In this document: piece after piece, positions 479 through 58,527 of the stretch
Numbering within the stretch: the stretch's first letter is position 1
How the letters are laid out: the number at the start of each line of letters is the position of its first letter
Source: Bugula neritina
Taxonomy: Eukaryota > Animalia > Bryozoa
DNA: 64,000 bases
Reading direction: 5' to 3'
Assembly: GCA_964035545.1 (NCBI GenBank)
Contig: OZ037768.1
Span: 24,731,344 to 24,795,343, forward strand
Notes under the pieces: model-generated
What the model was told of the DNA's origin: nothing
Seen by the model: the letters and a program-made list of their open reading frames with translations, nothing else
Database searches by the model: none
Program-made: the position numbers and the translations under genes

Positions 479-2779
479 GCAAGAGACGTAAAAAGGTGCA
501 CCTGATACCTAAAGAGTTACTGTACACTGCTCCGTCTAACCCTTTCACAGGTGATGACACTCTGTGTTAGCATTGAGCTTACAATCTAAGTGCCTCTCTT
601 TCTCTCTGGTAACTTTGTGTTCATGATGTCATGTGTTCATGTCTCTTTCTCTCTGGTAACTTTGTGTTCATGATGTCATGTGTTCTTGTCTCTTTCTCTC
701 TGGTAACTTTGTGTCTATGATGTCATGTGTTCATGTCTCTTTCTCTCTGGTAACTTTGTGTCCATGATGTCATGTGTTCATGTCTCTTTCTCTCTGGTAA
801 CTTTGTGTCTATGATGTCATGCGTCTCTTTCTCTCTGGTAACTTTGTGTCCATGATGTCATGTGTTCGTGTCTCTTTCTCTCTGGTAACTTTGTGTCCAT
901 GATGTCATGTGTTCGTGTCTCTTTCTCTCTGGTAGCTTTGTGTCCATGATGTCATGTGTTCGTGTCTCTTTCTCTCTGGTAACTTTGTGTCCATGATGTC
1001 ATGTGTTCATGTCTCTTTCTCTCTGGTAACTTTGTGTCTATGATGTCATGCGTCTCTTTCTCTCTGGTAACTTTGTGTCCATGATGTCATGTGTTCATGT
1101 CTCTTTCTCTCTGGTAACTTTGTGTCTATGATGTCATGCGTCTCTTTCTCTCTGGTAACTTTGTGTCCATGATGTCATGTGTTCGTGTCTCTTTCTCTCT
1201 GGTAGCTTTGTGTCCATGATGTCATGTGTTCGTGTCTCTTTCTCTCTGGTAACTTTGTGTCCATGATGTCATGTGTCTCTTTCTCCCTGGTAACTTTGTG
1301 TTCATGATGTCATGTGTTCGTGTTTTTCAGAAAGCAGCAAGTGGAGCAGAACACACATGATGTCTAAACAAATGCCTCAAGTTTACTCCTCCATGTTGCC
1401 TTCATGTTTGAGAGGTACCTTCAAATATTTGGTATACTGGTTGCTATAGTAACACACAGAGTATATTAAATATAGAACTGGTTGCTATAGTAACACACAG
1501 AGTATATTAAATATAGAACTGGTTGCTATAGTAACATATATTTTATAACTTGCGCTGGTTGCAGTGAATCAGAGAAGAGAGTTGGCAGAAGTTGTTACTT
1601 CTGAAGAAATTGAGTTGCTTAGCAACAAGAGCTCCTCTTGTAAGATACGAGAAAATGCTGGCAGTTCTTGTAAGTTTAATATTTCAAACTTATCGGCTAA
1701 TATTTTCACTAGCTGTTAGTACACTCACTGTTAGTATACTCACTGTTAGTATACTTACTGTTAGTATACTCACTGTTAGTATACTCACTGTTAGTACACT
1801 CACTGTTAGTACACTCACTGTTAGTATACTCACTGTTAGTATACTTACTGTTAGTATACTCACTGTTAGTATACTCACTGTTAGTACACTCACTGTTAGT
1901 ACACTCACTGTTAGTATACTTACTGTTAGTATACTCACTGTTAGTACACTCACTGTTAGTATACTTGCTGTTAGTATACTCACTGTTAGTATACTCACTG
2001 TTAGTACACTCACTGTTAGTATACTCACTGTTAGTATACTCACTGTTAGTATACTCACTGTTAGTATACTCACTGTTAGTATACTCACTGTTAGTATACT
2101 CACTGTTAGTACACTCACTGTTAGTATACTCACTGTTAGTACACTCACTGTTACAGATAAGCCAAAGCGCTCGACCAGAACTCTGAAAGACAGACTGGAG
2201 AGATGGAGGTATGAAGTCTCTCTGCTGACTGGAGATGCCAGGGAGTTTTCTCCTCGTACAGGTAGTCACCGTCTGTTTCATCACTTTAGCGAGTCATCTG
2301 ATGCATGAAACATTGCAAGTATTAGATTTAATGCACAATACTGCTATGAAGTATTGGCCTGTTCATGAATTGTGTGTTGGTCTAATCACTCTTGTCATAT
2401 TGATTCTGTTAGAGTGTTAGTTATAGTTAGTTAAATAGATGGCCAACTCTTCAATAAGTTAGGTTGTGATTGGGTGTGCGAGTGAGTGAGTGAGTGAGTG
2501 AGTAATTGAGTGAGTAACCTTGTGGTACAACTAGACTATGTCAATGAGTTATTTTAGTATTTAAACGTGCGAGTTATTTATTTTTCAGCTATTAAGCCAC
2601 CTAATTACCAGGAGATCCTCAGTAGTATAAACAACTCCTCTCACTTTCTTCCTCCTCTCAGCGCAATTAACATCAAAAGGCAAAACCTCAATCTATGTAT
2701 TGATGAGGGAGTTATCTCCCCAGAAGAGAGCATGGAATTGCTGTTGAGTAACGTTCGAAATGAATGGCTCAAGTGTTAA
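479..2779 (+). CDS. 3' exons of an unidentified protein-coding gene (5' part outside window)
   Basis: Exons 479-550, 1331-1414, 1565-1639, 2157-2261 and 2589-2779 join in one open frame through GT-AG introns (KRRKKVHLIPKELLYTAPSNPFT...LKDRLERWRYEVSLL...NVRNEWLKC*); AATAAA at 2921. No family recognised. Confidence 0.7.
594..1322. repeat. Intronic minisatellite, 47-bp unit with shorter deletion variants
   Basis: Unit GTCTCTTTCTCTCTGGTAACTTTGTGTCCATGATGTCATGTGTTCAT; ends a few nt before the AG at 1330. Confidence 0.95.
1436..1537. repeat. Intronic 41-bp tandem repeat, about 2.5 copies
   Basis: Unit ACTGGTTGCTATAGTAACACACAGAGTATATTAAATATAGA. Confidence 0.9.
1713..2152. repeat. Intronic 15-bp array, about 29 copies
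   Basis: Unit CTGTTAGTAYACTCA; the last copy becomes the acceptor CTGTTACAG (2156). Confidence 0.95.
2479..2515. repeat. (GAGT)n microsatellite
   Basis: Direct reading, in the last intron of the first gene. Confidence 0.85.
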
Positions 2780-3399
2780 TCCGTTCTCATGGAGAGAATA
2801 TTCATTTCACCAGAGACTAAAGGAAACTTCTTTCACTCTAATTAGGAAGTATATCTTCTGTTGCTTTCATTTTCCTTTTATACTATTTTCAGCTTCAATC
2901 AGAAGGTATATATATTTAAAAATAAATTTTGACTTTGCTACTTGCCCTCTCACTACAAAGATATTCATGTATTTCATTTGTAATATAGTTTCTGATTAAA
3001 AGCTTTGTGGTTTCTAAAGAATTGGCTGCTAAAGCTATTTCCACATATTGATTTATGTTGAAGCTCAGTTTCAGTTTGTGAACATCGCGTTGTGAGTCAT
3101 GCATATGCATGTTATGAATATTAAAAAATATAATAAGTAAATTTTGAAAGCAGAGAAAAGTTTTTGCAAGATGATCAAGTGATGGTCAATAATGCTGAAT
3201 GTAGCACATCTAGTGGTTAGAATTTTCACACAGTGCTAGTAAATATATTAAGGACAAAGTGTTGAGTATTTCACTTATGGTGTTCTTGGCAGCTAGTTAA
3301 TGTGAACATGAAAAGCTTCAAATTTGAGTGATAATATTTGATCTGATGGTGTGCAAACTTGTCCACTCGTCTTTTCTTTTACTTGTTTTTATTGACGAG

Positions 3400-3960: not shown

Positions 3961-4224
3961 GTTATCTTCTTTATATAATAGCCCGAACGTTTAAAGCTGA
4001 TAGAAAAACGTCTCGCACAACACAAGTCCCTTTTGACAATAATAAATCAATTTCGCTAGCTATGGGTGCAATAGTAGCAATCCTATCGCACGCAAATAAA
4101 TATTTTGCGGTACTCATGATTATATGAGGGATGAATTATAGCTCAGACTATTATCCATACGAAGTCTGCCTGGAGGGAGTAGTTTATGCGAGTTAGTAAA
4201 TAAAGTATGCTAATATTTCTATAA

Positions 4225-5072: not shown

Positions 5073-8000
5073 ATGGCTCAATGTCAGAAATCGGCACAAG
5101 CTTTTGTGAGAGATGCATTCAATCCAATAGTCGGTGTCATATGTTCAGAGGAGGCAAATGTCATCTGCCAGAAGAATCATTTATCATTTGTTGAGTTGCT
5201 CTTACCGTTTAGTCGAATAACATCTCCAAGTGAGTTGAGGATCAAAACTTACTATTGCTGATTTTGTTAGCATCTATTTCTTATGAATGCCAGGTTTGTG
5301 ATGAGATTAACTGAAGCCAGCGGTGCATCAGCTCAATTACTTTGGTAGTTGTTGTTGGCTTATTGTTTGATAGTGTTTGTAATGCTGTTTCAGTTCATAT
5401 AAGAGACGCCTCAAACATCAGTGTAAATCTTCAGGACTTTTCTGTACAATTCCGGGATGTGAATAATCTCCCCCCACAACAGACTCTTGGGGTAAAGCTA
5501 CTAACGTGAGTTTGAGTTGTGGAATACTAATAGGCTGTATCACTTTCACTACTCAGTATCTCACTGCTCAGTATCACTCTCACTACTCAGTATCACTCTC
5601 ACTGCTCAGTATCACTCTCACTGCTCAGTATCACTCTCACTGCTCAGTATCACTCTCACTACTCAGTATCACTCTCACTACTCAGTATCACTCTCACTGC
5701 TCAGTATCACTCTCACTACTCAGTATCACTCTCACTGCTCAGTATCACTCTCACTGCTCAGTATCTCACTGCTCAGTATCACTCTCACTACTCAGTATCA
5801 CTCTCACTGCTCAGTATCACTCTCACTGCTCAGTATCACTCTCACTGCTCAGTATCACTCTCACTACTCAGTATCACTCTCACTACTCAGTATCACTCTC
5901 ACTGCTCAGTATCACTCTCACTGCTCAGTATCACTCTCACTGCTCAGTATCACTCTCACTACTCAGTATCACTCTCACTACTCAGTATCACTCTCACTAC
6001 TCAGTATCACTCTCACTACTCAGTATCACTCTCACTGCTCAGTATCACTCTCACTACTCAGTATCACTCTCACTACTCAGTATCACTCTCACTACTCAGT
6101 ATCACTCTCACTACTCAGTATCACTCTCACTACTCAGTATCACTCTCACTACTCAGTATCACTCTCACTGCTCAGTATCACTCTCACTACTCAGTATCAC
6201 TCTCACTACTCAGTATCACTCTCACTGCTCAGTATCTCACTGCTCAGTATCACTCTCACTACTCAGTATCACTCTCACTGCTCAGTATCACTCTCACTGC
6301 TCAGTATCACTCTCACTGCTCAGTATCACTCTCACTACTCAGTATCACTCTCACTACTCAGTATCACTCTCACTGCTCAGTATCACTCTCACTACTCAGT
6401 ATCACTCTCACTACTCAGTATCACTCTCACTACTCAGTATCACTCTCACTACTCAGTATCACTCTCACTGCTCAGTATCACTCTCACTGCTCAGTATCAC
6501 TCTCACTGCTCAGTATCACTCTCACTACTCAGTATCACTCTCACTACTCAGTATCACTCTCACTACTCAGTATCACTCTCACTGCTCAGTATCACTCTCA
6601 CTGCTCAGTATCACTCTCACTACTCAGTATCACTCTCACTGCTCAGTATCACTCTCACTACTCAGTATCACTCTCACTACTCAGTATCACTCTCACTACT
6701 CAGTATCACTCTCACTGCTCAGTATCACTCTCACTGCTCAGTATCACTCTCACTACTCAGTATCACTCTCACTGCTCAGTATCACTCTCACTACTCAGTA
6801 TCACTCTCACTGCTCAGTATCACTCTCACTACTCAGTATCACTCTCACTGCTCAGTATCACTCTCACTGCTCAGTATCACTCTCACTGCTCAGTATCACT
6901 CTCACTACTCAGTATCACTCTCACTGCTCAGTATCACTCTCACTGCTCAGTATCACTCTCACTACTCAGTATCACTCTCACTGCTCAGTATCACTCTCAC
7001 TGCTCAGTATCACTCTCACTACTCAGTATCACTCTCACTACTCAGTATCACTCTCACTGTACATATAAGTCATATTATCATTATGAATACTTGCAGGGAG
7101 GCAGTGGGTGTCTGTTTCCCTACTCAGAAGGAGCAGCACATCACTTCAGGAGGCTATGAGATTCGTATAGCTGGTGAGACTCAATGCTATACTATATTAT
7201 ATTATATTATACTATATTATATTATGTTATATTATACTATATTATATTATGTTATATTATACTATATTATATTATGTTATACTATATTATATTATGTTAT
7301 ATTATACTATATTATATTATGTTATACTATATTATATTATGTTATACTATATTGTACTATCTTATATTATGTTATACTATATTGTACTATATTATACTAT
7401 GTTATACTATATTGTACTATATTATATTATATTATACTATATTGTACTATATTATATTATGTTATACTATATTGTACTATATTATATTATGTTATGTTAT
7501 ACTATATTGTACTATATTATATTATGTTATACTATATTGTACTATATTATATTATGTTATGTTATATTATACTATATTATATTATGTTATACTATATTGT
7601 ACTATATTATATTATGTTATACTATATTGTACTATATTATATTATGTTATACTATATTGTACTATATTATATTATGTTATACTATATTGTACTATATTAT
7701 ATTATGTTGTACTATATTGTATTATGTTATATTATGTTATACTATATTGTACTATATTATATTATGTTATACTATATTGTACTATAGCCTCTACCCCATG
7801 GTTTGAAGAGTATAGAGAATGCTTTCTAAACATCATAGCCCCGTCTGATCATGAGTTTCTGCGACACTATGCAGCCTGCGTGTTCGTCGTGTCCTCAACT
7901 CATTCCGATCCTATGAGTCAGTTTGCTCAACTCACAATAACACAGCATCAACAGCAGGTTAGTGTGTGTAACACAGTACTAACTACAGGTTAGTGTGTAT

Positions 8001-11000
8001 AACACAGTACTAACAACAGGTTAGTGTGTATAACACAGTACTAACAACAGGTTAGTGTGTATAACACAGTACTTACAACAGGTTAGTGTGTATAACACAG
8101 TACTAACAACAGGTTAGTGTGTATAACACAGTACTAACTACAGGTTAGTGTGTATAACACAGTACTAACAACAGGTTAGTGTGTAACACACAGTACTACC
8201 TACAGGTTAGTGTGTATAACACAGTACTAACTACAGGTTAGTGTGTAACACAGTACTAACTACAGGTTAGTGTGTATCACACAGTACTACCTACAGGTTA
8301 GTGTGTATAACACAGTACTAACTACAGGTTAGTGTATATAACACAGTACTAACTACAGGTTAGTGTATATAACACAGTACTAACTACAAGTTTATGTGTT
8401 TATGTATGTTATAGACAATAAGGAACTCAATGGTAAATGTGTTGTTTTAATGTTGGGTATTATGTGGTTATTGTTAAACTTTCTGTTTACATGCATGGCC
8501 AGCATCTGTACCTGAGCAGTATATCTGCTATATAGTATATCTGTACCTGTGTAATACTAGAAGATAGTAGTATATCTACATGATAGTAGTATATCTACAT
8601 GATAGCAGTATATCTACATGATAGTAGTATATCTACATGATAGCAGTATATCTACATGATAGCAGTATATCTACATGATAGTATATTCTGTTGTGTTGCC
8701 TTCACTTGTAAGTCTACATGTTCAACTCTAAGAGGATCCAGCCTTGCTAACTGGTCATTATCTTCTCCATGTTGACAAGACGACTCTATACTGCAGTGTA
8801 TACATAGCAACAGCGTACACATAGCAACAGTGTACACGTAGCAACAATGTACATGTAACAACAGTGTATACGTAACAACAGTGTATACGTAGCAACAGTG
8901 TATACATAACAACAGTGTATACGTAACAACAGTGTATACGTAGCAACAGTGTATACATAGCAACAATGTATACATAGCAACAGTATACATATGTATGTTA
9001 TGTTTCCAGCAGCAGACGCCAGCCAAGCTGCCCAAGTGGTTTGCTGCTGATCTGTGCAGATACTATGTGCTCCTACATGACTGTACTGAGGGGGAAGACC
9101 CTAAGTGAGTTGTCTTCTCGTGTATTACCTCTCACTACATATATTACTACTAGTAGTTAGTATATAGTACTACTAGTAGTTAGTATACAGTACTACTAGT
9201 AGTTAGTATACAGTACTACTAGTAGTTAGTATACAGTGCTACTAGTAGTTAGTATACAGTAATACTAGTAGTTAGTATTCAGTACTACTAGTAGTTAGTA
9301 TACAGTACTACTAGTAGTTAGTATACAGTAATACTAGTAGTTAGTATTCAGTACTACTAGTAGTTAGTATACAGTACTACTAGTAGTTAGTATACATTAC
9401 TACTAGTAGTTAGTATACAGTATAACTGTAGAGCGGAAGCTGTCTACCAGAGTATGAAGTCAAAGTACGGAGTTCACTCCTGTCATCTCCTCAGAATCAA
9501 CTCAGTTCTCCCAAATACTGAGGATACGCCGTCTAGCGAGACTCTGCCCGACCCGTGGAGTAACTTTATCAGACCTCGCAGCTCCGTGAGTTTCTATTTA
9601 GACTATTTGTATTACCAGACTATACAGTATACTGTGTATAGTCTAAATATCTGTATTATTAGATTATACAGTATACTGTGTATAGTATAAATATCTGTAT
9701 TACTAGACTATATAGTATATTGTGTATAGTATAAATATCTGTGTTACTAGACTATACGGTATACTGTGTATAGTATATAGTATACTGTGTATATCAGATG
9801 CCTTCCAAGGAACACCCAGAAATGAAGACTAATGGTATAACAGACAGTCAACAAGTGAACTCTGATACTCTCCACCATCCTCTCAGCACCACAACTACGG
9901 AGAGAAGTTATCCTGGAGTTCCCCGTAGACCGAGAACCAGATCTGTTTCAGAGAGGGGGTGTTGGCTGAGCTCCCATGATCACGACAGGTTGAAGACGTT
10001 TGTTCAGGAGTTTGTGGTGAGAGCTGTAATACCCTGGGCTGAGCGTCTCATCAAAGCCTACAACGAGTTGGTGCGTGTTTTTATATTACTCTATCATATT
10101 ATATTACTGTATTATATATTACTATGTCATATTATATTATTGTATTATATATTACTATGTCATATATTACTATAATATATGTTACTATATTACTAAAATG
10201 TATATTACTATATTACTATTGTAGTACCAGTCCAAGAAGCGAGCTGGTAGTCTCATCAAGTCTCTATTTAACAGAGGGAAACAGACCGAGTCAAAACCTG
10301 TGTCAGGGTGAGTCATATGATGTGAATATTCAGTCACAGTAGAGGTTGTGTTGTATTGTATACTATTCTGTATTACTATACTGTAGAGGTTGTGTTGTAT
10401 TGTATACTATACTGTAGAGGTTGTGTTGTATTGTATAATATACTGTAGAGGTTGTGTTGTATTGTATACTATACTGTAGAGGTTGTGTTGTATTGTATAC
10501 TATTCTGTAAAGGTCGTGTTGTATTGTATACTGTACTGTAGAGGTTGTGTTGTATTGTATACTACACTGTAGAGGTTGTGTTGTATTGTATACTATACTG
10601 TAGAGGTTGTGTTGTATTGTATACTATACTGTAGAGGTTGTGTTGTATTGTATACTATACTGTAGAGGTTGTATTGTATACTATACTGTAGAGGTTGTGT
10701 TGTATTGTATACTATACTGTAGAGGTTGTGTTGTATTGTATACTATACTGTAGAGGTTGTGTTGTATTGTATACTATTCTGTAAAGGTTGTGTTGTATTG
10801 TATACTGTACTGTAGAGGTTGTGTTGTATTGTATAATATTCTGTAGAGGTTACCTCTCTGAATCTCCGGAGATGCAGCTTAGACGTCTGGGAGACTTGTG
10901 TTTCATGTTTCAGCTGTACGAACAGGCGTACAGTGTCTACCACACTCTGAAAAAGGACTTTGAGGGGGACAAGACGTGGCTGTACTGTGCTGGTGCCCAG

Positions 11001-14000
11001 GTGTGTAGATGTATGATGTCACAGTAGTAGTAGTGATGATGTCACAGTAGTAGTGATGATGTCACAGTAGTAGTAGTGATGATGTCACAGTAGTAGTGAT
11101 GATGATGTCACAGTAGTAGTAGTGATGATGTCACAGTAGTAGTGATGATGATGTCACAGTAGTAGTAGTGATGATGTCACAGTAGTAGTAGTGATGATGT
11201 CACAGTAGTAGTAGTGATGATGTCACAGTAGTAGTAGTGATGATGTCACAGTAGTAGTGGTGATGATGTCACAGTAGTAGTGATGATGTCACAGTAGTAG
11301 TGATGATGTCACAGTAGTAGTGATGATGATGTCACAGTAGTAGTAGTGATGATGTCACAGTAGTAGTGATGATGATGTCACAGTAGTAGTAGTGATGATG
11401 TCACAGTAGTAGTGGTGATGTCACAGTAGTAGTGATGATGTCACAGTAGTAGTAGTGATAATTTCACAGTAGTAGTAGTGATGATGTCACAGTAGTAGTA
11501 GTGATGATGTCACAGTAGTAGTAGTGATGATGTCACAGTAGTAGTGGTGATGATGTCACAGTAGTAGTGGTGATGCAGGAAATGGCTGGACTCTCCATAT
11601 TCATGCAAGGTGCTGCCGCACAGAGGAACTACCCGACTCACTACCTGGACGGAGCCATTGATGTCTACCAGACATGTCGCTCTCAGTCCTTCATGACTCG
11701 CTCTGTTCTCCTCAGCACCGAAGTTCTCAAGGTCAAAGGGCTCTGGTTGCAAGCTGCTTCTCAGTTCCTCAAACTGACTGGGGAGGTGAGTTACTCCCCC
11801 CACCTACTGTATAGAACGTAATTCTAGACTATATTATACTATAGCATGTATTACTAGACTATATTATATTATAGCATGTATTACTAGACTATATTATACT
11901 ATAGCATGTATTACTAGACTATGTTATACTATAGCATGTATTACTAGACTATATTATACTGTAGCATGTATTACTAGACTATGTTATACTATAGCATGTA
12001 TTACTAGACTATATTATACTATAGCATGTATTACTAGACTATATTATACTATAGTATGTATTACTAGACTATATTATACTATAGTATGTATTACTAGACT
12101 ATATTATACTATAGCATGTATTACTAGACTATATTATACTATAGCATGTATTACTAGACTATATTATACTATAGTATGTATTACTAGACTATATTATACT
12201 ATAGTATGTATTACTAGACTATATTATACTATAGTATGTATTACTAGACTATATTATATTATAGCATGTATTACTAGACTATATTATACTATAGTATGTA
12301 TTACTAGACTATATTATACTATAGTATGTATTACTAGACTATATTATATTATAGCATGTATTACTAGACTATATTATACTATAGTATGTATTACTAGACT
12401 ATATTATACTATAGTATGTATTACTAGACTATATTATACTATAGTATGTATTACTAGACTATATTATACTATAGTATGTATTACTAGACTATATTATACT
12501 ATAGTATGTATTACTAGACTATATTATACTATAGTATGTATTACTAGACTATATTATACTATAGCATGTATTACAGGAGTTTGACCTGAGAAGTGCTGTC
12601 TTGCTGGAACAGGCAGCGTACTGTTACCTCAACATGTCTCCTCCACAGATTAGGAAGTTTGCCTTCTACATGGTGCTGGCTGGTCACAGGTACTCCAAGT
12701 CCAGTCAGAGGAAGCACTCTCTCAGGTGTTACACCGTCTCGTCCCAAGTCTATAAAGGGAAGGACTGGACTCTGGCTGAGGTACTACACTGTATGATACT
12801 ATACTGTATGATACTATACTGTATGATACTATACCGTATGATACTATACCGTATGATACTATACCGTATGATACTATACCGTATGATACTATACCGTATG
12901 ATACTATACCGTATGATACTATACCGTATGATACTATACCGTATGATACTATACCGTATGATACTATACCGTATGATACTATACCGTATGATACTATACC
13001 GTATGATACTATACCGTATGATACTATACCGTATGATACTATACCGTATGATACTATACCGTATGATACTATACCGTATGATACTATACCGTATGATACT
13101 ATACCGTATGATACTATACCGTATGATACTATACCGTATGATACTATACCGTATGATACTATACCGTATGATACTGTAGAATCACATAGGAGTGAGTGTA
13201 TCGCGTCTCTCCAGTCAACTCAGCCTCTCTCTGCAAGCTCTCTCTCACGCCAGCAAACTTCTTACAGAGTCTTCAGAACAACCTCACCAGCAGTGCGTCT
13301 TCCTCAAGGAGTATCTGCAGTTATACCAGGTGGGTAGAGAATGTCTGCAGATATACCAGGTGAGTAGAGAATATCTGCAGTTATACCAGGGGAGTAGAGA
13401 ATGTCTGCAGATATACCAGGTGAGTAGAGAATGTCTGCAGATATATTAGATGAGTAGAAAATGTCTGCAGATATATCAGGTGAGTAGAGAATGTCTGCAG
13501 ATATATCAGGTGAGTAGAGAATGTCTGCAGATATATCAGGTGAGTAGAGAATGTCTGCAGATATATTAGATGAGTAGAAAATGTCTGCAGATATATCAGG
13601 TGAGTAGAGAATGTCTGCAGATATATCAGGTGAGTAGAGAATGTCTGCAGATATATCAGGTGAGTAGAGAATGTCTGCAGATATATTAGATGAGTAGAAA
13701 ATGTCTGCAGATATATCAGGTGAGTAGAGAATATCTGCAGTTATACCAGGGGAGTAGAAAATGTCTGCAGATATACCAGGTGAGTAGAAAATGTCTGCAG
13801 ATATATCAGGTGAGTAGAAAATGTCTGCAGATATATCAGGGGAGTAGAGAATATCTGCAGTTATACCAGGGGAGTAGAGAATGTCTGCAGATATACCAGG
13901 TGGGTAGAGAATGTCTGCAGATATACCAGGTGAGTAGAGAATATCTGCAGTTATACCAGGGGAGTAGAGAATGTCTGCAGATATACCAGGTGAGTAGAGA

Positions 14001-17000
14001 ATGTCTGCAGATATATTAGATGAGTAGAAAATGTCTGCAGATATATCAGGTGAGTATCCCTGTCTGCTCTGCAGAAAGTGAAAGCCGATGAAGGGGAGAA
14101 GTGGAGGTCTGAGATGGCTGTCCCACAGATGGTGGACAACGAAGTGATGGTTACGACGGAGCAGTTTGAGATGCCCACCAACAGCACGGTGTACTCAGAC
14201 GATGTGAGGTGGACTCAGTTAGAGGAAGCCTGTGTTCTCAAGAGTCAGGGCAGCCTTCCCCTTGTCTTCATTAAGAGTACCCCTTCTTATAACAAATACA
14301 TGACCAATACTCAATGCCCAGGGGCTGTGCTTGGAGGTATTACACAATACTATGTAACTATGTAACTGTGTAACTATGTAACTATACAGTTGTACTGTGT
14401 AACTATACAGTTGTACTATGTAACTATACAGTTGTACTGTGTAACTATGTAACTATACAGTTGTACTATGTAACTATGTAACTATACAGTTGTACTATGT
14501 AACTATTAACTATGCAATTGTACTATATGACTATACAGTTGTGCTGTGTAACTATACAGTTGTACTGTGTAACTAAACAGTTGTACTATGTAACTATACA
14601 GTTGTACTAGTAACTATACAGTTGTACTATGTAACTATACAATTGTACTATGTAACTATTAACTATGCAATTGTACTATGTGACTATACAGTTGTGCTGT
14701 GTAACTATACAGTTGTACTGTGTAACTAAACAGTTGTACTATGTAACTATACAGTTGTACTAGTAACTATACAGTTGTACTATGTAACTATACAGTTGTA
14801 CTGTGTAACTATACAGTTGTACTATGTAACTATCCCCAGAGACCCAGTTTGTCAGAGTTATGGTATACAACCCGTTAGGAGTTGTCTTACAGTTGACTCA
14901 AGTCCACATTAGCTGGAGATTCCAACCTTCAGGGGAGGAAAACTTTTCCTTCGACAGCAAGGTGACATTCTCTAGTCATAGTTGTATAATATACTCACTA
15001 CTATATATATAGTTGTATATACTCACTACTATATATATAGTTGTATCTACTCACTACTATATATATATAGTTGTATATACTCACTACTATATATATAGTT
15101 GTATATACTCACTACTATATATATATAGTTGTATATATTCACTACTTCATATATATAGTTGTATATATTCACTACTATATATATAGTTGTATATACTCAC
15201 TACTATATATATAGTTGTATATACTCACTACTATATATATAGTTGTATATATTCACTACTTCATATATATAGTTGTATATACTCACTACTATATATATAG
15301 TTGTATATATTCACTACTATATATATATATATAGTTGTATATACTCACTACTATATATATATAGTTGTATATATTCACTACTATATATATATATAGTTGT
15401 ATATACTCACTACTATATATATAGTTGTATATATTCACTACTTCATATATATAGTTGTATATATTCACTACTATATATATAGTTGTATATACTCACTACT
15501 ATATATATAGTTGTATATACTCACTACTATATATATATATAGTTGTATATACTCACTACTATATATATATAGTTGTATCTACTCACTACTATATATATAG
15601 TTGTATATACTCACTACTATATATATAGTTGTATATACTCACTACTATATATATAGTTGTATATACTCACTACTATATATATAGTTGTATATACTCACTA
15701 CTATATATATAGTTGTATATACTCACTACTATATATATATATAGTTGTATATACTCACTACTATATATATAGTTGTATATACTCACTATTATATATATAG
15801 TTGTATATACTCACTACTATATATATAGTTGTATATACTCACTACTATATATATAGTTGTATATACTCACTACTATATATATAGTTGTATATACTCACTA
15901 CTTCATAGCGTTTCTATTCTTCAGAATAACCCGGATGTAGTTGATCAGATGAATATTCCAGTAATTGACCTCCTTCCACTTAGCAGGCAATGGGTGAGTT
16001 TGTTATACTCCCTGTGATTGGTGGGTGAGTTTGTTATACTCCCTGTGATTGGTGAGTGAACGTGTTATACTCCCTGTGATTGGTGGGTGAGTTTGTTATA
16101 CTCCCTGTGATTGGTGGGTGAACGTGTTATACTCCCTGTGATTGGTGGGTGAGTTTGTTATACTCCCTGTGATTGATGTGTGAGTTTGTTGTACTCCCTG
16201 TGATTGGTGGTGATGCTCGTTATACTCCTGTTTAGATTCTCTTCCGTTTGGTGCCGAAAGCTCTGGGAATACTCAACCTGCTCTCCATCAACTACCATGT
16301 GGCTTACAAAGACTTCAGCTCGGAGGTGCTCTCCTCTCCCGTCCAGGGAGAACTATTGCTCACTGTACGAGGTCCCCGACTGAACAACACTGTCAAGGAC
16401 AAAACCTCCGTCAGCTATGCAGACGACCAACGACTGTACATCAACATACAGTCAGCACTTCCCAAACTACAGGTGGCTATATGTGTCTATTATTAGTAAC
16501 AGAGTAATATATGTGTCTATTATTAGTAATGGATTAATATAATTATGTGTCTATTATTAGTAACAGAGTAATATATGTGTCTATTATTAGTAACAGAGTA
16601 ATATATATGTTTATTAGTAACAGAGTAATATATATGTCTAATATTAGTAACAGAGTAATATATATGTCTATTATTAGTAACAGAGTATATATGTCTATTA
16701 TTAGTAATATAGTAATATATGTGTCTATTATTAGTAATAGAATAATATATGTGTCTATTATTAGTAACAGAGTAATATATATGTCTATTACTAGTAACAG
16801 AGTAATATATATGTCTATTACTAGTAACAGAGTAATATATATGTCTATTATTAGTAATATAGTAATATATGTGTTTATTATTAGTAATGGAGTAATATAT
16901 GTGTCTATTATTAGTAATAGAGTAATATATATGTCTATTACTAGTAACAGAATAATATATATGTCTATTATTAGTAACAGAGTAATATGTATGTCTATTA

Positions 17001-20000
17001 TTACTAACAGAATAATATATATGTCTATTATTAGTAACAGAGTAATATACGTGTCTATAATTAGTAATATAGTAATATATGTGTCTATTATTAGTAACAG
17101 AGTAATATATATGTCTATTATTACTAACAGAATAATATATATGTCTATTATTAGTAACAGAGTGATATATGTGTCTATTATTAGTAACAGAGTGATATAT
17201 GTGTCTATTATTAGTAACAGAGTAATATATGTGTCTATTATTAGTAACAAAGTAATATATGTGTGTCTATTATTAGTAACAGAGTGATATATGTGTCTAT
17301 TATTAGTAACAGAGTAATATATGTGTCTATTATTAGTAACAGAGTAATATATGTGTGTCTATTATTAGTAACAGAGTAATATATGTGTCTATTATTAGTA
17401 ACAGAGTAATATATGTGTCTATTATTAGTAACAGAGTAATATATGTGTCTGCAGGTGATTTTCCAGTCACTGCCTGACAACATGCTGTGTGGAGAAATCG
17501 TCAGAGTCCCTGTGAAACTCACTAACGTTGGATCTGTAGCCCTGAGCAGACTACATGTTACCTGCAATGAGCCGCAGATGGTCACTTTCTCAGAATATAC
17601 TGATGTGCAGGACTATTCTCCTTTCTCTAGGTATTCTGTTAGCTAGCTCAGTGACATAACAGTAAGTGAGTAGTGAGTAGGGAGTACAGAGTGAGTAGTG
17701 AGTACAGACTGAGTAGTGAGTACAGAGTGAGTACTGAGTAGTGAGTACAGAGTGAGTAGTCAGTACTGAGTAGTGAGTACAGAGTGAGTACTGAATAGTC
17801 AGTAGTGAGTACTAAGTAGTGAGTAGTGAGTACAGAGTGAGTAGTCAGTAGTGAGTAGTCAGTAGTGAGTAGGGAGTACAGAGTGAGTAGTCAGTAGGGA
17901 GTACAGACTGAGTAGTCAGTGGTGAGTACTGAGTACAGACAGAGTGAGTAGTGAGTACAGAGTGAGTAGGGAGTAGTGAGTACAGAGTGAGTAGTCAGTA
18001 GTGAGTACAGAGTGAGTAGTCAGTAGTGAGTAGTGAGTACTGAGTAGTGAGTAGTGAGTGATATAGTATCACACATACCTCCAGGAAAGTGATCGCACTA
18101 GACACTCGAGTTGCCACACTCTCACCTGCCGATTCACTGGATGTCGAGCTGTGGATCCGGGCAGAAGATATTCCGATGAGCAAACCTCTCAACTTCCTGT
18201 TTTATTATGAGTTGGCAGATGATTCTACGGGAACGAAAATAAGGTATATACTGTGATATGTACTATGATATATACTATGATATGTACTATGATATGTACT
18301 ATGATATGTACTATGATATGTACTATGATATATACTGTGATATATACTATGATATGTACTATGATATATACTATGTTATGTACTATGATATGTACTATGA
18401 TATGTACTATGATATATACTATGATATATACTATGATATATACTGTGATATATAATATGTTATGTACTATGATATATACTATGATATGTACTATGATATA
18501 CTATGATATGTACTATGATATATACTATGATATATACTATGATATGTACTATGATATGTACTATGATATATACTATGATATATACTATGATATGTACTAT
18601 GATATATACTATGATATGTACTATGATATGTACTATGATATGTACTACGACTGTATGACATGTGTAATGGCTGCAGGCACAGGTGTAGTAGATACAGTTT
18701 TGTCATAACCACCACTTCCGGTCTCACCACTCAGTGTAACACTCACATTAGAGCAGTTAAAGACGCGACACACCTGGGGAGTTATCTCTCCTCTATACTA
18801 GTACACAACTGTTTGAAGGTATTCCCATTCTATCTTATAATATACAGTGGATTTATAGCTATGTTGTTGTTATTGTGGTGGTATGTTGTTGTTAATGTGG
18901 TGGTATGTTGTTGTTGATGTGGTGGTATGTTGTTGTTATTGTGGTGGTGTGTTGTTGTTAATGTGGAGGGTTATGTTGCTGTGGCACTATTGTAGCCATC
19001 TAACGAAGCTGCCACTGAGTTTGCTGTCACAGACATATTATGTAAGAGCAGCGGATGGCGGGTGACGTCACTCAGCTCTGAGTCACCTTCCAATGTCCGA
19101 GTCAACCAATCAGAAGTGGCGCTCCTCAATGTCTACCTCATGCAGCTACACGAGGATAAAACACAGTGTCTTAGTCGGGTACATCTCAACTCCGAACAGG
19201 TGAGGAAAGTAGCACAACCAGTGTGACACGGTGCACTGGGCATGCTCGGTGAAGTACCGGGACAGACACGGTGCACGGGGCATACTTGGCTCAACTTTAT
19301 GATGACTGAACGTAGAAAACAATTATATTTCATTCAACTGGTCGGATTCAGATATTTTTATAAAACGAGTTTGATGTTTGTTTTGGAAAATTAAATGAAT
19401 GATTAGATGTTGGGGTTGTTCTGCTAGCCTATTGGTGGTTTGTGTGGCCTTGACCTCAATGGTTTAGTATTGTACAGGTTGCCATGGGCGACGAGATTGT
19501 TGACAGCTTCCTGTCCGTACCCTTTGTCCAATCAGAGCAGCCCCCTGCTGGAGAGGGAGACCAATCAGATCCTTGCGTGGCTGTAGTCGGTGTAGTGTGG
19601 AAGGTGAGTGTGTTCTATACAGTGTACGTACATGTTCTATACAGTGTACGTACATGTTCTATACAGTGTACATACATGTTCTATACAGTGTACATACATG
19701 TTCTATACAGTGTACATGCATGTTCTATACAGTATACATACATGTTCTATACAGTGTACATACATGTTCTATACAGTGTACATGCATGTTCTATACAGTA
19801 TACATACATGTTCTATACAGTGTACATACATGTTCTATACAGTGTACATACATGTTCTATACAGTGTACATACATGTTCTATACAGTGTACATACATGTT
19901 CTATACAGTATACATACATGTTCTATACAGTGTACATACATGTTCTATACAGTGTACATACATGTTCTATACAGTGTACATGCATGTTCTATACAGTATA

Positions 20001-51967: not shown

Positions 51968-54900
51968 ATGAAAGGTGTTGGGGAGACAATTCCTACAGAT
52001 TATGACTCTACCACAACTTGGTATGACTGGTACATAAAAAACCTGAGTAAAATTAAACCAACATCAAACTATTATTGGACGCACCAATTGATTACCCCTC
52101 AAACACAAAGCTGGCAGAAGACAACGAATTTCGCTGATCAGCTGGCGACGACTCCATTTTATCATCTACCACGTATGTATACTAATATACTGCTATAGTA
52201 TGTATGATACTGTAAAGTTGTATATACTAATATACTGCTATAGTATGTATGATACTGTAATGTTGTATATACTAAAATACTGCTATAGTATGTATGATAC
52301 TGTAATGTTGTATATACTAATATACTGCTATAGTATGTATGATACTGTAATGTTGTATATACTAAAATACTGCTATAGTATGTATGATACTGTAATGTTG
52401 TATATACTAATATACTGCTATAGTATGTATGATACTGTAATGTTGTATATACTAAAATACTGCTATAGTATGTATGATACTGTAATGTTGTATATACTAA
52501 TATACTGCTATAGTATGTATGATACTGTAAAGTTGTATATACTAAAATACTGCTATAGTATGTGTGATACTGTAATGTTGTATATACTAATATACTGCTA
52601 TAGTATGTGTGATCCTGTAATGTTGTATATACTAATATACTGCTATAGTATCTATGATACTGTAATGTTGTATATACTAGTATACTGCTATAGTATCTAT
52701 GATACTGCTATACTCTGTTTATTGTTCAGGCACCAGGTTTGGCTTATCTTTATCAACATTTCTGATTACGGGACTAATTGCTGCCGCTGTCTGTGCTTTT
52801 ACGATTTGCATTTGCTGCTGCGTCTGTCACACAAAACGTCAGCGAAGGAGGAGAATACAATTGAGAAGATCTGGTATATATAGTATATGTGACCAGTCGC
52901 GACAAAACCGGGGATGTGGCGGCGTTTATTAAGTGTAGTAAATGAAGGTTTAATTTGGAAATACTTAAATTTGAAATTAATTTCCAATTTTCAGATTTTA
53001 GACTTTTCTAGTGCAAAAAAATATAAGGATTTCAAAAATCATACTTTCGTAAGCATTTGATGATTCCTTCAGCTCTAAAATTGCATTTAAAGCTGGTAAC
53101 TAAGGCTTTCAATTTTTTAAATGATGAAAAAATTGCGAAGTTATCGATTAAAGAAAGAAGACAATTTTAGTCACTTTCATAGCATGGAATCTTGCAAATT
53201 TATTTTTTATCAAATGAATTTAGCTTACACCTCTTTCTTCGCACTGTCAGAAGCATCATATTTAAAATCGAAGGCTAGTTTTAGTTTTTCATCGTGTTCC
53301 ATCCAAAGTTAGCTTTTAAGTTACTGAGCTGTTTTGCCCTTTGGTGATAAATGCTGAACTTAATCTTTATCTTTAGCGTTCAAGCTTGAAAACCACAACA
53401 ATACAGGTAATTATACTCAAAACAATCATTTACGCTACTAACTTAGAATTGTTGCCAGGATTATTTGTAGTCATCAATTTAATAATATTTATACTATCAC
53501 TAGGACACTAGGAGTAGGAGTCTGTCTTAGTCTATTCTATTCTTATTCTATACTACTACTAGTACTAGTAACTATTTAGATGGCTTTCACTATGACTCAC
53601 AGTTTGAGGTACGGTTACTCATAATGATAATCATAATGACTATTATTCATGATTTACTGATACTGGTATTTGGTAGTAAAACCAAATGTAACTCATTAAT
53701 AATAATAGTTAATACTAATAAGTAATAGTATAACTATAACTATAAGTTTAGTATAAGTATAAGTAATTAATAATTATAAATTCACTATTACTATTAGTAT
53801 TACTATTACTTATTACTTATTAGTATTACTGTATTATTTATTTGGGTCTGACTCTGAGTTTTGCCTTTGCTATTAATACTTGATACTCATACTGATAGTA
53901 TTATATTTATTGATTTATTCTATAGTTGATATTTCAATTTACATTAGACTTACTCTTACTCTTAGTAACTTTTAGCCTCTGTCTTAGATTTTGTCAATAC
54001 AGTTACTGATTACTATTACTATTAGTATTAACATTAGGCCTACTAGTACTAGTCAAACTACCGGTTCCTTTTGTGATTTTTAAATTAGCTCGAAGTTTGA
54101 TTTAAAATATAATGATAAAATCTTTATCACATTATGCAGGCTTACAGTTAGTGTTACTATCAAAACTCAATTGATAATCATATTTATATTCATAAAAGCA
54201 TCACCTATAACCAAATTGAAATGATATATGTGACTAAATGTAAATGATTATAATGATGAAATATTAATGCGAGTTCATGATGATTCTATAGTTGACTGAC
54301 TTAGTTTTTCAGTAAGTTACTTTTAGTCTTATTTAGTGAGTAGTAACACTAACTAAATGTATAAATAGTCTAAACTTTTTAATTTTATTTTAAGATGAGC
54401 AAAAATTTATTCATATTTTAAAGTAATTCATTGAATTCTAATTGATTTTATAGTAAATGTCTCTAATAGATTCAGTTGCACTTAGCTAGCTTTTTTACTC
54501 AATTAAATGCCTGAGTGGTTAATAGTTATCTAAAGACATTGCTTCAAAATTGCCAATTGCAGATATGCTAGATATTCAAGTGCATAATGTGTAATTTTAC
54601 TGATAATACTATAATGTTAATATAGAATAATCCGATATTCTGTACATTTTAGAAAGTGCACTTGTGAGGGCATTAGAGTGAAGACTTATACCTACACAAC
54701 TCTACTACCTATCAATCTAATACTTCTAATGTAGACACTCCGAATTTTGGCTTGCAAGGTTATGGCTTCTGCTTATTTCATTCATAAAAAGGTTTGCAGT
54801 CTTTTAATGATGTGCTTGAAAATTTTCAAGCATTTTTTTAATTTAAATTGTTCTGTTTAATTCAATAAATTTAAACGTTGATGAAATGCAGGATCACAAT

Positions 54901-57900
54901 AGTACTACAAGAGTGTTCAGCCAACTAAATTTCTATAATATAACTGGGTATAATTTCTAATCAAGCTACCGTTTCCTTTTGTTATTTAAAAAAAGTCAAC
55001 ATTGTACTTTCAGCTCTGGAATAGACAATAAGTGGGTAGATTTGCAGGATGGAGGTTAAGTAGCAGCATCTATAATTGCTAGAAAATCAACTGATGATAG
55101 TGATGAAGCTTTTGCCACATACATGATGTTATGTGTCCATACTCTGTAAACTCATATTATGAAGACCAAGGAAGTAGAAAGATGATAAGTGCCTTCTCTG
55201 CAAAAACTGTAGAAGCTATCTAATTTTCTTTTCTTGATAAGAGTTAATTCAAGCATAATGGTTGTATCCAGGCTGGATTTTTTACTGCATTTAATTGGTT
55301 TTTTAAAATAATGTATTTGATGTTTTAAATGTGAATATTAATGCCTAATAAAACTCAAAAGTTCAAATAGCTGATTTTATGTTTATAATATTTTCAACAT
55401 CTCAGCCAAATCAATTGCTAAATTTAGTTGCTGTTAGAGATTATAAAGATATTTATGAATGAACCTCGCATGATCTCATAATAGTCAAATAATTTTCTCA
55501 TAAGTGTTCTACTCATAAAGCAATAATTATGAAACAGCACAGCTCAATAGCTGCAGTTTGATATATTACAGAATATATTAGAGGAAAGGGAGGTATTCAA
55601 TGTATAAGAGGAAGCAGCTGCCATTTTGTTTTATATGATTTCCTGCTGACTTGGATGCCTAATTTAAATATCTCAACACACAAACTTGCTGAAACATCTT
55701 CTTCTTTGCTGGAATTGTTAAACCTTTCAACCATTAAACAAAGTAAAAAGCAAATTGACAAATAAATTAGACAAAAAGTTTGGCGGCCATATTTGACCTA
55801 ATTTTATGTTGAGGCAGCATGAAATTTAGTTTAACAGAAAGCCCAAACTTTCACAATTATTTTGATACCAAATTTGTCACTATTCCTGTTATACAAAGAC
55901 CCGTTGCTAAGGCTTGTAAATTGTAAACAAATAATTCTCAACTTATTCTAGAGTTGCCAACTTTAAACGCGATTTTCTCGAAACAGTAATTTAGAAATTC
56001 TAAAAACGTTAAGGTTTTTAAATACTGATATCTCGAGTTCTACTTATGCTAGAGACTTCAAATAAAGTGCAAAATGTTCAAAAAAGTCTGCTCTATCACT
56101 CCATAGTAATAACTAGGTATCCAACATTTTATATACATCCCTTGTTTTGTGGTGCCAGGTCACATATAGTACTACCTGTATATAGTATATAGTACTACCT
56201 GTATATAGTATATAGTACTACCTGTATATAGTATATAGTACTACCTGTATATAGTATATAGTACCACCTGTATATAGTATATAGTACTACCTGTATATAG
56301 TATATAGTACTACCTGTATATAGTATATAGTACTACCTGTATATAGTATATAGTACTACCTGTATATAGTATATAGTACTACCTGTATACAGTATATAGT
56401 ACTACCTGTATATAGTATATAGAGTATAGAGTGTATAGTTACAGTGTCCACGCAGTATACTGGAGCCAACAGGCCGAATGGTGACACAAGATTTGCTGTG
56501 AATAGAAACCCCTGGTCTTCCCCACCTGTCTCTACAAACACTTATCCAGTGTGAGTCACTATTCGTTATAACTTGTATTATATCTCTACTAGATAAGTTA
56601 TATTATATCTACTAGCTAAGTTATATTATATCTACTAGATAAGTTATATTATATCTACTAGATAAGTTATAGTATATCTACTAGATAAGTTATATTATAT
56701 CTCTACTAGATAAGTTATAATATATCTACTAGATAAGTTATATTATATCTACTAGATAAGTTATAGTATATCTACTAGATAAGTTATATTATATCTCTAC
56801 TAGATAAGTTATAATATATCTACTAGATAAGTTATATTATATCTACTAGATAAGTTATATTATATCTACTAGATAAGTTATATTATATCTACTAGATAAG
56901 TTATATTAAATCTACTAGATAAGTTATATTATATCTCTACTAGATAAGTTATATTATATCTACTAGCTAAGTTATATTATATCTACTAGATAAGTTATAT
57001 TATATCTACTAGATAAGTTATATTATATCTACTAGATAAGTTATATTAAATCTACTAGATAAGTTATATTATATCTCTACTAGATAAGTTATATTATATC
57101 TCTACTAGATAAGTTATAATATATCTACTAGATAAGTTATATTATATCTACTAGATAAGTTATATTAAATCTACTAGATAAGTTATAATATATCTCTACT
57201 AGATAAGTTATAATATATCTACTAGATAAGTTATAATATATCTACTAGATAAGTTATAATATCTCTACTAGATAAGTTATATTATATCTACTAGATAAGT
57301 TATATTATATCTACTAGATAAGTTATATTATATCTACTAGATAAGTTATATTATATCTACTAGATAAGTTATATTATATCTACTAGATAAGTTATATTAT
57401 ATCTACTAGATAAGTTATATTATATCTACTAGATAAGTTATATTATATCTACTAGATAAGTTATATTATATCTACTAGATAAGTTATATTATATCTACTA
57501 GATAAGTTATGTTATATCTACTAGATAAGTTATATTATATATCTATTAGATAAGTTATAATATATCTACTAGATAAGTTATATTATATCTACTAGATAAG
57601 TTATAATATATATCTACTAGATAAGTTATATTATATCTACTAGATAAGTTATATTATATCTACTAGATAAGTTATATTATATCTACTAGATAAGTTATAT
57701 TATATCTACTAGAAAAGTTATATTATATCTACTAGATAAGTTATATTATATATCTATTAGATAAGTTATAATATATCTACTAGATAAGTTTTGTGTTTGA
57801 AGCCATTCTTGTCATAATTCTCTCTAATTTATAGTCGTGATACATATTCTGGTTTTCCTCGAGATGTGAGTTTTTCCATGCTGCCCCCTTCCTATGAACA

Positions 57901-58527
57901 AGCTACAACAGAGACCCAGGCTAGTACTTAGACATACAGTATCAGATTCCTCTGGTCTCTTCATGTAACTGAGTCAGATGATCAGATGAGTAGTGGTAAG
58001 CTTTAAGGTTCTGTCTACCCTTACAGTTCAGGGAGCCAGAAGTATCTTCTCAACCCACCGGCGGTGGTTTACCATCTTACCAAGACTTAATCAAAACGTC
58101 ACCATATAATTCTGAAGTAAACATTGACCAAACAGAGCAAGTCAGGCAGGTTGACACTACAGGACAGGTTGACACTACAGGGCAGGTTGACACTACAGGG
58201 CAGGTTGACACTACAGGGCAGGTTGACACTACAGGGCAGGTTGACACTACAGGGCAGGTTGACACTACAGGGCAGGTTGACACTACAGGGCAGGTTGACA
58301 CTACAGGGCAGGTTGACACTACAGGGCAGGTTGACACTACAGGGCAGGTTGACACTACAGGACAGGTTGACACTACAGGGCAGGTTGACACTACAGGGCA
58401 GGTTGACACTACAGGGCAGGTTGACACTGCAGGACAGGTTGACACTGCAGGGCAGGTTGACACTACAGGGCAGGTTGACACTACAGGACAGGTTGACACT
58501 ACAGGGCAGGTTGACACTACGTGTTGA
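51968..58527 (+). CDS. Putative single-pass membrane protein with Cys-rich juxtamembrane motif and PY motifs (WBP1/VOPP1/Shisa-like architecture)
   Basis: Exons 51968-52172, 52730-52873, 56445-56550, 57835-57919 (or 57865) and 58027-58527 splice in frame: Thr-rich ectodomain, TM FLITGLIAAAVCAFTI, CICCCVC, basic KRQRRRR, then LPPSYEQA and LPSYQD. Start codon and last exon uncertain. Confidence 0.7.
52175..52710. repeat. Intronic array, 45-bp unit x12
   Basis: Unit TGTATATACTAATATACTGCTATAGTATGTATGATACTGTAATGT. Confidence 0.95.
52888..56164. mobile_element. 3.3-kb non-autonomous DNA transposon, superfamily not assigned
   Basis: Imperfect TIRs TGTGACCAGTCGCGACAAAACCGGGGATGT and (reverse complement of right end) TGTGACCTGGCACCACAAAACAAGGGATGT; TA on both sides (or ATAT with termini 1 nt shorter); no transposase ORF. 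Confidence 0.75.
56165..56422. repeat. Intronic array, 23-bp unit x11
   Basis: Unit TAGTACTACCTGTATATAGTATA. Confidence 0.95.
56575..57790. repeat. Intronic array, 23/25-bp unit
   Basis: Unit TCTACTAGATAAGTTATATTATA. Confidence 0.95.
58147..58520 (+). repeat. 18-bp array x21, in frame with the last exon (QVDTTG)
   Basis: Unit CAGGTTGACACTACAGGR. Confidence 0.95.

What the first reader, a model, noticed from the sequence alone, without database searches (positions are those of the whole stretch)
551..58520. Nearly every internal intron carries its own private tandem array: a gene-body-restricted repeat-generating system
Seen: more than 40 arrays with units of 3-47 bp. They occupy about 21 of 24 TRAPPC8 introns, 15 of 17 SLMAP introns and most introns of the two flanking genes. 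Each array has a different unit, usually fills most of the intron and often stops within 0-30 nt of the GT or AG. The intergenic stretches (2.8-5.0, 24-27.8, 47.4-51.9, 58.6-60.3 kb) and the first coding introns of TRAPPC8 and SLMAP have none. Exons stay in frame. Inference: this is not a dispersed satellite family or a transposon. Each array was amplified in place from local sequence by a process tied to transcribed gene bodies (transcription-coupled damage or repair, R-loops, or gene-body chromatin), with exonic events mostly purged. Selection for longer introns is an alternative. I know of no named system for this but cannot search the literature.
Basis: partly seen in the sequence, partly recalled or inferred. 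Interest (0 to 1): 0.9.

Follow-up and report, generated by a model that had tools for sequence, protein, structure and literature searches.

The report
Chromosome-end intron stuttering in a bryozoan
Near the ends of this moss animal's chromosomes, most introns have been overwritten by their own short tandem repeats that start right beside the exons; this resembles the recently described 'sequence stuttering' of bird genes and looks like a by-product of a high-recombination zone rather than of transcription itself.

Summary
In detail: 43 of 50 introns in four genes (21/24 TRAPPC8, 15/17 SLMAP) hold 47 private minisatellites, 83% of intron DNA. Public RNA and DNA contigs confirm splicing and arrays. 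The window is the last 64 kb of Bugula neritina chromosome 4.

Interior housekeeping genes have array-free introns (3/24 with arrays), look-alike arrays are about 20-fold denser near chromosome ends, and there is no R-loop skew. Distal exons have higher GC3 (0.55 vs 0.41).

In introns that keep long unique DNA, 14 of 16 arrays lie within 45 nt of a splice site (3.7 expected), so they start at exon edges. Units use an odd strand-symmetric TA/AC-rich vocabulary.

Best reading: recombination-linked local duplication in distal zones, seeded at exon edges and bounded by exons. It works like avian sequence stuttering, the mouse PAR and amphioxus 'mirages', but is AT-rich and spares intergenic DNA. 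No recombination map was available, so the mechanism is inferred. This scan noted the same pattern in three other windows of this genome.

The parts
479..2779 (+). Gene 1 (unidentified, 3' part; 5 exons). Arrays in introns 1-3: 591-1323 (47-nt unit), 1436-1536 (41), 1713-2153 (15); last intron array-free
   Evidence: no Pfam match
5073..22772 (+). TRAPPC8, 25 exons, about 1288 codons; 23 arrays in 21 of 24 introns; array-free introns 1, 20, 23
   Evidence: junctions of exons 4-9 seen in RNA contig
5537..9777 (.). TRAPPC8 intron 2-6 arrays: 5537-7058 (19), 7188-7786 (30), 7937-8399 (31), 8563-8683 (19), 8794-8984 (17), 9145-9422 (23), 9604-9777 (44)
   Evidence: copy-number joints in other lineages at 8847-8932 and 9604-9691
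7937..8399 (+). Donor-spanning array: end of exon 4 plus 5' splice site, 13 decoy copies; first donor (7958) is the one used
   Evidence: RNA contig loose end joins exon 4 to the exon at 9010
10369..10851 (+). Acceptor-spanning array: 15 upstream copies of the 3' splice site of exon 9; the last copy (10847) is used
10082..22551 (.). Remaining TRAPPC8 arrays: 10082-10219, 11013-11575 (23), 11810-12574 (30), 12782-13175 (15), 14349-14833 (21), 14989-15902 (28), 16478-17450 (30), 17665-18059, 18245-18647 (12), 18860-18982 (22), 19611-20612 (22), 20772-21626 (22), 21992-22551 (27)
13314..14056 (+). Donor-spanning array of intron 12 (30-nt unit = exon end plus donor); best match elsewhere in the genome 73%
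15991..16228 (+). Donor-spanning array of intron 15 (31-nt unit, 5 decoy donors)
24050..27800 (.). Minisatellite-free stretch (intergenic plus probable untranslated first intron of SLMAP) with degenerate 6/12-nt tracts and an old dispersed element near 26600-27110
27872..47249 (+). SLMAP (FHA domain, coiled coil, C-terminal hydrophobic tail), 18 exons; 17 arrays in 15 of 17 introns: 28412-29399, 29596-31623, 31779-32628, 32788-32863, 33046-34255, 34620-35970, 36203-36276, 36395-40137, 40450-40602, 40730-40910, 40917-41873, 41959-42621, 42778-43639, 43755-43992, 44035-44624, 44770-44973, 45493-47046
36395..40137 (.). Largest array: 27-nt unit x 138.6, 97% matches, leaves about 74 nt of non-array intron
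40273..40362 (+). In-frame 45-nt duplication inside SLMAP coding exon 10 (exonic event that survived)
47225..47366 (+). 19-nt array that starts in the last coding codons of SLMAP, spans the stop and runs into the 3' UTR
51968..58550 (+). Gene 4 (membrane protein with Cys-rich juxtamembrane stretch and PPxY-like motifs; model tentative at both ends). Arrays 52178-52707 (45), 56164-56422 (23), 56568-57790 (23), 58145-58520 (18, donor-spanning, 20 copies)
52874..56444 (+). 3.6-kb intron with 3.3 kb of unique DNA; its only array sits 22 nt from the 3' splice site
63599..63786 (+). 24-nt x 7.8 array inside an open frame (63482-63805) that ends at a donor-like site; probable in-frame exonic array
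   Evidence: frame open, no Pfam match; exon status inferred

Best explanation
A regional mutational regime, not a dedicated system. In the distal 1-2 Mb of each chromosome, where crossover rate per base is probably highest, repair of recombination intermediates makes short (mostly 12-50 nt) tandem duplications, preferentially within about 45 nt of an exon edge. Out-of-register exchange then expands and homogenises each array, the unique intron interior is lost, and the array ends up filling the space between the two splice signals. Exons wall each array in, so each intron has its own unit; exonic events survive only in frame or in UTRs; decoy splice sites are tolerated because the outermost site is used. 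SHOWN: privacy, end gradient on all nine chromosomes, exon-edge position, short non-array remainder, correct splicing, higher distal GC3, length differences between lineages. INFERRED: that recombination is the driver, that unique intron DNA was deleted, and why edges are favoured (my guess: strand invasion holds in conserved exons and slips where homologues begin to differ).
For: Window is the terminal 64 kb of chromosome 4. Strong-array cover is 18-37% in 10-kb gene-rich samples at 0.2, 1.0 and 23.2 Mb and near zero in most interior samples. Introns with arrays: window 43/50, other distal 17/36, interior 3/24; p=1e-9 and 0.006. Of 100 look-alike loci genome-wide, 59 lie within 2 Mb of an end (18 expected, p=7e-20); density falls from 31 to 1.6 per 10 Mb and is 1.4 on the largest vs 10.1 on the smallest chromosome; a MITE control shows no such bias, 4/37. 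GC3 0.54-0.60 distal vs 0.41 interior; exon 11 has 24 GC-ward vs 7 AT-ward third-position differences against a relative (p=0.003). Two relatives have a unique intron of 595 nt and at least 587 nt where the window has 765 nt of array plus about 26 nt. Collapsed intron length median 67-75 nt vs 435 nt for interior introns. Edge test: 14/16 within 45 nt (3.7 expected), 12/16 within 30 nt (2.5), 7/16 within 15 nt (1.3). Multi-unit block duplications in 7/31 arrays. The same syndrome is reported in other high-recombination regions.
Against: No recombination map exists in my hands; position, chromosome size and GC3 are proxies. Within the window GC3 does not track arrays (0.50 vs 0.47), and SLMAP, with the biggest arrays, has GC3 of only 0.45. 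Some distal genes have no or few arrays (L020, 1.0 Mb from the end). The model does not by itself explain why intergenic DNA is spared or why units are TA/AC-alternating (purine-pyrimidine alternation 0.68 vs 0.50-0.55). The edge test rests on 16 hand-checked arrays and predicted exons; a later insertion into a short array-bearing intron would mimic it. Only 180 kb outside the window could be read.
Confidence: 0.55

Rival explanations
1. Gene-body chromatin co-factor: CpG methylation or H3K36me3 in mid-gene bodies recruits mismatch or base-excision repair that expands repeats, and distal chromatin amplifies it.
For: Arrays avoid first introns and thin out at 3' ends. CpG o/e is 0.59 intergenic, 0.36 in introns, 0.15 in units; array-flanked exons are somewhat more CpG-poor (0.42 vs 0.51; 0.58 vs 0.72). 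A multi-exon cytosine methyltransferase-like gene exists on C1 (DNMT1 vs DNMT2 not resolved).
Against: Interior introns are equally CpG-depleted (0.37) yet lack arrays. No bryozoan methylome found. Does not predict the chromosome-size effect.
Confidence: 0.17
2. Neutral birth everywhere plus a minimum-intron ratchet: deletions shrink distal introns until the array is needed to keep a spliceable length, so intronic arrays cannot collapse while intergenic ones drift to one copy.
For: 13 of 43 introns would be under 65 nt if collapsed, two only 24 and 34 nt; the shortest credible array-free introns are about 65-75 nt.
Against: Most collapsed lengths are viable; arrays reach 3.7 kb; young arrays already sit at edges of long introns (UFD1); almost no young exact duplications of 13 nt or more in 18 kb of intergenic and long-intron DNA. 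It can only be a contributor.
Confidence: 0.1
3. One reading: transcription-coupled damage, R-loops or splicing-linked stalling generate arrays in any transcribed gene body.
For: Intergenic DNA is spared; arrays hug splice sites, where the spliceosome and paused polymerase act; T>A skew on the sense strand in 53/69 arrays.
Against: Interior housekeeping genes lack arrays; no GC skew; the T>A skew equals that of array-free introns (19/25, 16/21); unit words are strand-symmetric.
Confidence: 0.12
4. Dispersed satellite family or transposon footprints inserted into introns.
For: Weak 68-86% gapped matches to other loci, and one multi-locus family on C8 resembles the SLMAP intron 7 array; units share short words.
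Against: No near-identical copy elsewhere for any array tested; five arrays are copies of their own exon edge; look-alikes are explained by shared composition.
Confidence: 0.03
5. Assembly artefact.
For: Repeat arrays are hard to assemble; run X1 may be the source sample.
Against: HiFi assembly at 132-fold, QV 53.7; arrays carry patterned variant units; short-read contigs span them exactly and a lineage about 5% divergent carries the same units.
Confidence: 0.01

Closest known systems
Avian 'sequence stuttering' on dot chromosomes (Hron et al. 2026, PMC12954441; zebra finch T2T, 10.1101/2025.10.14.682431)
   Same: [quoted passage not shown]
   Different: Bird arrays are GC-rich and tied to G-quadruplexes, and intergenic DNA is also affected. 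Here units are 31% GC, TA/AC-alternating, intergenic DNA is spared, and the zone is a gradient at ordinary chromosome ends of an invertebrate.
Mouse pseudoautosomal region genes (Kasahara et al., 10.1101/2022.03.26.485930)
   Same: Introns occupied by minisatellites, short introns, high GC3, attributed to very frequent recombination and unequal crossover.
   Different: Dominated by one shared 31-nt family (mo-2), also intergenic; GC3 far more extreme; one region only.
Amphioxus 'mirages' (Adh3 and globin genes; PMC3087553)
   Same: Minisatellites spanning exon-intron boundaries that multiply splice signals without disturbing splicing.
   Different: Described at single loci; here they are 5 of 47 arrays within a window-wide pattern.
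Human subtelomeric VNTR enrichment (Linthorst et al. 2020, PMC7608644)
   Same: Locus-private minisatellites enriched many-fold near chromosome ends, linked to meiotic recombination.
   Different: GC-rich, sparse, both intergenic and intronic; they do not replace whole introns.
C. elegans autosome arms (from memory, not checked here)
   Same: Recombination-rich arms with more tandem repeats, many in introns.
   Different: Largely dispersed repeat families and transposon-derived inverted repeats.

Membership tests
Avian sequence stuttering | Introns filled by one or several locally expanded imperfect tandem motifs | tested here: met
   43/50 introns, 83% of intron DNA, private units
Avian sequence stuttering | Coding regions stay intact; blocks do not cross exons | tested here: met
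   All modelled TRAPPC8 and SLMAP exons stop-free and in phase; RNA contig spliced as modelled
Avian sequence stuttering | Occasional copying of an exon edge with its splice site | tested here: met
   5 introns with 5-20 copies of their own donor or acceptor
Avian sequence stuttering | Extensive intron length variation among individuals | tested here: inconclusive
   Joints skipping 84 and 86 nt and a 33-nt extra duplication in two other runs, but these are short-read contigs of a lineage about 5% divergent
Avian sequence stuttering | GC-rich, G4-prone sequence on dot microchromosomes, intergenic DNA also affected | tested here: not met
   Units 31% GC, no GC skew; ends of 11-36 Mb chromosomes; intergenic stretches spared
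Mouse PAR syndrome | Short unique introns and raised GC3 | tested here: met
   Collapsed median 67-75 nt vs 435 nt; GC3 0.55 vs 0.41, a mild version
Mouse PAR syndrome | One dominant shared minisatellite family | tested here: not met
   Best unit pair 80%, no near-identical copies elsewhere
Mouse PAR syndrome | Measured very high meiotic recombination rate | not testable with these tools
   No linkage or LD map at hand
Amphioxus mirages | Tandem repeat spanning an exon-intron boundary with normal splicing kept | tested here: met
   Five arrays; two checked against an RNA contig
Amphioxus mirages | Somatic length instability | not testable with these tools
   Needs raw long reads from parts of one colony
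R-loop-driven repeat instability | G-rich non-template strand | tested here: not met
   33 positive vs 35 negative skews, p=0.90
Dispersed satellite or transposon family | Shared unit at many loci | tested here: not met
   Only own locus above 90% for five arrays

The most novel reading that the evidence does not exclude
Exon edges themselves nucleate tandem duplications in recombination-rich DNA (for example where a strand invasion anchored in a conserved exon meets divergent intron), and a repair polymerase with a TA/AC-alternating bias writes or selects the units. That would be an undescribed, position-targeted mutational process that turns over whole introns, independent of GC content and G4s, and might be the general cause of avian stuttering and mirages.
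Probability: 0.3. Interest if true: 0.78.

Novelty: new variant of a known kind. Interest (0 to 1): 0.52.

Why it matters
Sequence stuttering was reported in 2026 as a bird-specific instability of unknown mechanism, tentatively blamed on GC-rich G4 DNA. An AT-rich version in a bryozoan argues that G4s are not required and that the common factor is recombination plus exon constraint. The 18 chromosome ends give a graded natural experiment, with young arrays at the gradient's foot, in a small genome of a clonal, culturable animal in which meiotic and somatic change can be separated. The decoy splice sites also test how the outermost site is chosen. I found no paper describing this in bryozoans; the library is incomplete.

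Tried and rejected
R-loop skew: none. Units as branch-point or donor-derived words: common 4-mers are strand-symmetric, and exon-flanking zones of array-free introns do not share the vocabulary. Hairpin excess: palindromes slightly above mononucleotide shuffles (5.6 vs 5.0) but inverted 5-mers and folding energy not above dinucleotide shuffles. Copy number vs alternation: rho 0.19, p=0.12. 'Intergenic DNA is merely young': it holds elements 72-79% and 87-92% like their relatives. I first read 551-608 as an exon and 8415-8432 and 8712-8796 as exons; frame and the RNA contig reject these. Homologue searches with single exons gave one blank (says nothing of full-length kin) and three short genomic contigs of unnamed relatives. 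Sample L012 (retrotransposon) and L013 (satellite) were left out of intron counts.
Full report
Source. The window is G000:C4:24,731,344-24,795,343 of a 216,009,554-base assembly, and C4 is 24,795,343 bases long. Both numbers match the Darwin Tree of Life assembly tzBugNeri2.1 of the bryozoan Bugula neritina, nine chromosomes, HiFi at 132-fold (PMC11480708). The window is therefore the last 64 kb of chromosome 4. It shows no telomeric repeat, so the true tip lies somewhat further out.

Observation. I rebuilt the gene models from coordinates. TRAPPC8 has 25 exons (5073-22772), all stop-free and in phase, with one GC donor; homologues match along it and Pfam confirms it. SLMAP has 18 exons. About 18 kb of non-coding DNA between genes, and 3.3 kb inside one long intron, hold no comparable array, only short degenerate 6/12-nt tracts. 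An RNA contig joins exon 4 to the exon at 9010 and on through exon 9, so the first of 14 donors and the last of 16 acceptors are used. A short-read DNA contig spans two arrays with no mismatch, and runs from a lineage about 5% divergent in exons carry the same units with joints that skip 84 and 86 nt. The arrays are real, older than that split, and variable in length.

Privacy. No two window units match above 80%. Five arrays searched against the genome match only their own locus above 90%; other hits are 67-86% and gapped, as expected from a shared composition. Five arrays are copies of their own exon edge, which shows local origin directly.

The pattern is regional. Eighteen 10-kb samples along chromosome 4 show arrays at both ends and almost none inside. 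A small gene finder trained on the window (24/25 and 15-17/18 exons recovered in cross-tests) gives arrays in 17/36 other distal introns and 3/24 interior introns. Interior genes confirmed by Pfam include ADHFE1, an RNA polymerase I A49 subunit and an NAGK-like kinase, housekeeping genes by general knowledge, with plain introns of 100-850 nt. Genome-wide, 59 of 100 look-alike loci lie within 2 Mb of an end against 18 expected, density falls about 20-fold inward and rises about 7-fold from the largest to the smallest chromosome, while a MITE control is unbiased. These hit lists are capped lower bounds, but the cap is blind to position. Transcription alone is thus not sufficient.

Marks of a recombination zone. 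GC3 is 0.54-0.60 in distal samples and 0.41 inside; TRAPPC8 exon 11 differs from a relative's at third positions 24 times toward GC and 7 toward AT. Two unnamed relatives have about 600 nt of unique DNA in intron 10, where the window has 765 nt of array and about 26 nt else. Collapsing arrays leaves a median of 67-75 nt against 435 nt for interior introns, so unique DNA was probably replaced, not just added to. Seven of 31 arrays contain multi-unit block duplications. End bias, small-chromosome bias, GC3 rise, short unique introns and minisatellites co-occur in bird dot chromosomes, the mouse PAR and human subtelomeres. The link to recombination here is inference. Against a tight link, GC3 does not follow arrays exon by exon, and SLMAP has GC3 of only 0.45.

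Exon-edge seeding. In filled introns, closeness to splice sites is trivial. I therefore used only introns that keep at least 150 nt of unique DNA: 14 of 16 arrays lie within 45 nt of a splice site against 3.7 expected, 12 within 30 nt against 2.5, and 7 within 15 nt against 1.3 (first pass; sequences read). Young arrays of 2.6 and 4 copies in UFD1, 2 Mb from the end, sit 3 and 1 nt from acceptors. This goes beyond earlier notes of this scan, which found junction-spanning arrays no commoner than chance; adjacency, not spanning, carries the signal. The sample is small and hand-checked, and later insertions into short introns could mimic part of it.

Unit composition. Units are not random copies of intron DNA: purine-pyrimidine alternation is 0.68 against 0.50-0.53, TpA o/e 1.72, AA/TT o/e 0.36, CpG o/e 0.15. 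The words are strand-symmetric and not enriched beside exons of array-free introns. There is no sense-strand GC skew, and the T>A skew equals that of ordinary introns. This points to a DNA-level bias in what is written or expanded; I cannot explain it.

Mechanism and rivals. Best reading (0.55): recombination-linked duplication at exon edges in distal zones, expansion by out-of-register exchange, loss of the unique interior, exons as walls, purging of frame-breaking events (the surviving coding cases have 45- and 24-nt units). Rivals: gene-body chromatin as co-factor (0.17), transcription or splicing-coupled damage (0.12), a minimum-intron ratchet (0.10), dispersed family (0.03), artefact (0.01). 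Why intergenic DNA is spared remains the least explained step.

Comparison and verdict. It works like avian sequence stuttering (PMC12954441) and meets its three structural features, with length variation only partly tested; it fails the GC-rich, dot-chromosome and intergenic features, so I file it as a new variant, not a member. The junction-spanning subset equals amphioxus mirages (PMC3087553). I found no description in bryozoans. Spliced models were searched exon by exon; the joined search was left out. Interest 0.52.

Noticed in passing
window 22950-23690, minus strand: Probable small 3-4 exon gene with a short degenerate 18-nt array (23075-23164) in one intron; read from splice-like sites and open frames only.
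   Followed up: no
window 21781-21892: TRAPPC8 intron 23 has a GC donor and is one of the few array-free introns.
   Followed up: partly
window 1-430 and about 51260-51750: Two copies, in opposite orientation, of a MITE-like element with at least 40 relatives at 86-92% spread evenly over the genome.
   Followed up: yes
G000 C3 9.3-10.5 Mb and 17.5-17.8 Mb; C8 8.05-8.2 Mb; C2 20.4 Mb: Interior clusters of array look-alikes. Chromosomes 1-3 are about twice the size of the rest, so some clusters could be old chromosome ends left by fusions. Untested.
   Followed up: no
G000 C8 0.13-4.2 Mb: Many loci of one tandem family 72-77% like the SLMAP intron 7 array; a true dispersed family or a gene cluster, unlike the private arrays.
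   Followed up: no
L012 (C4:13.00-13.01 Mb): GC-rich stretch with gag-, protease-, reverse transcriptase- and integrase-like ORFs of a Gypsy-type LTR retrotransposon, in several frames (read by eye).
   Followed up: partly
L013 (C4:15.00-15.01 Mb): Entire 10 kb is one satellite of about 20-nt period, a candidate centromeric block.
   Followed up: no
G000 small contigs C11-C315: Most kinase hits carry in-frame TAA/TAG, the ciliate code, so many unplaced contigs are from a ciliate, not the bryozoan.
   Followed up: no
L004 7300-8316: 27-nt array not beside a predicted exon edge; by eye it continues an open frame on the plus strand and may be a coding 9-residue repeat.
   Followed up: no
window 3400-4000 and 49400-50900: Stretches that read like decayed non-LTR retrotransposon coding sequence; impression only, not tested.
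   Followed up: no
L021 894-2186 and 6966-8258: A fibrinogen-domain gene segment duplicated about 6 kb apart together with its arrays, which dates the arrays before that duplication.
   Followed up: no
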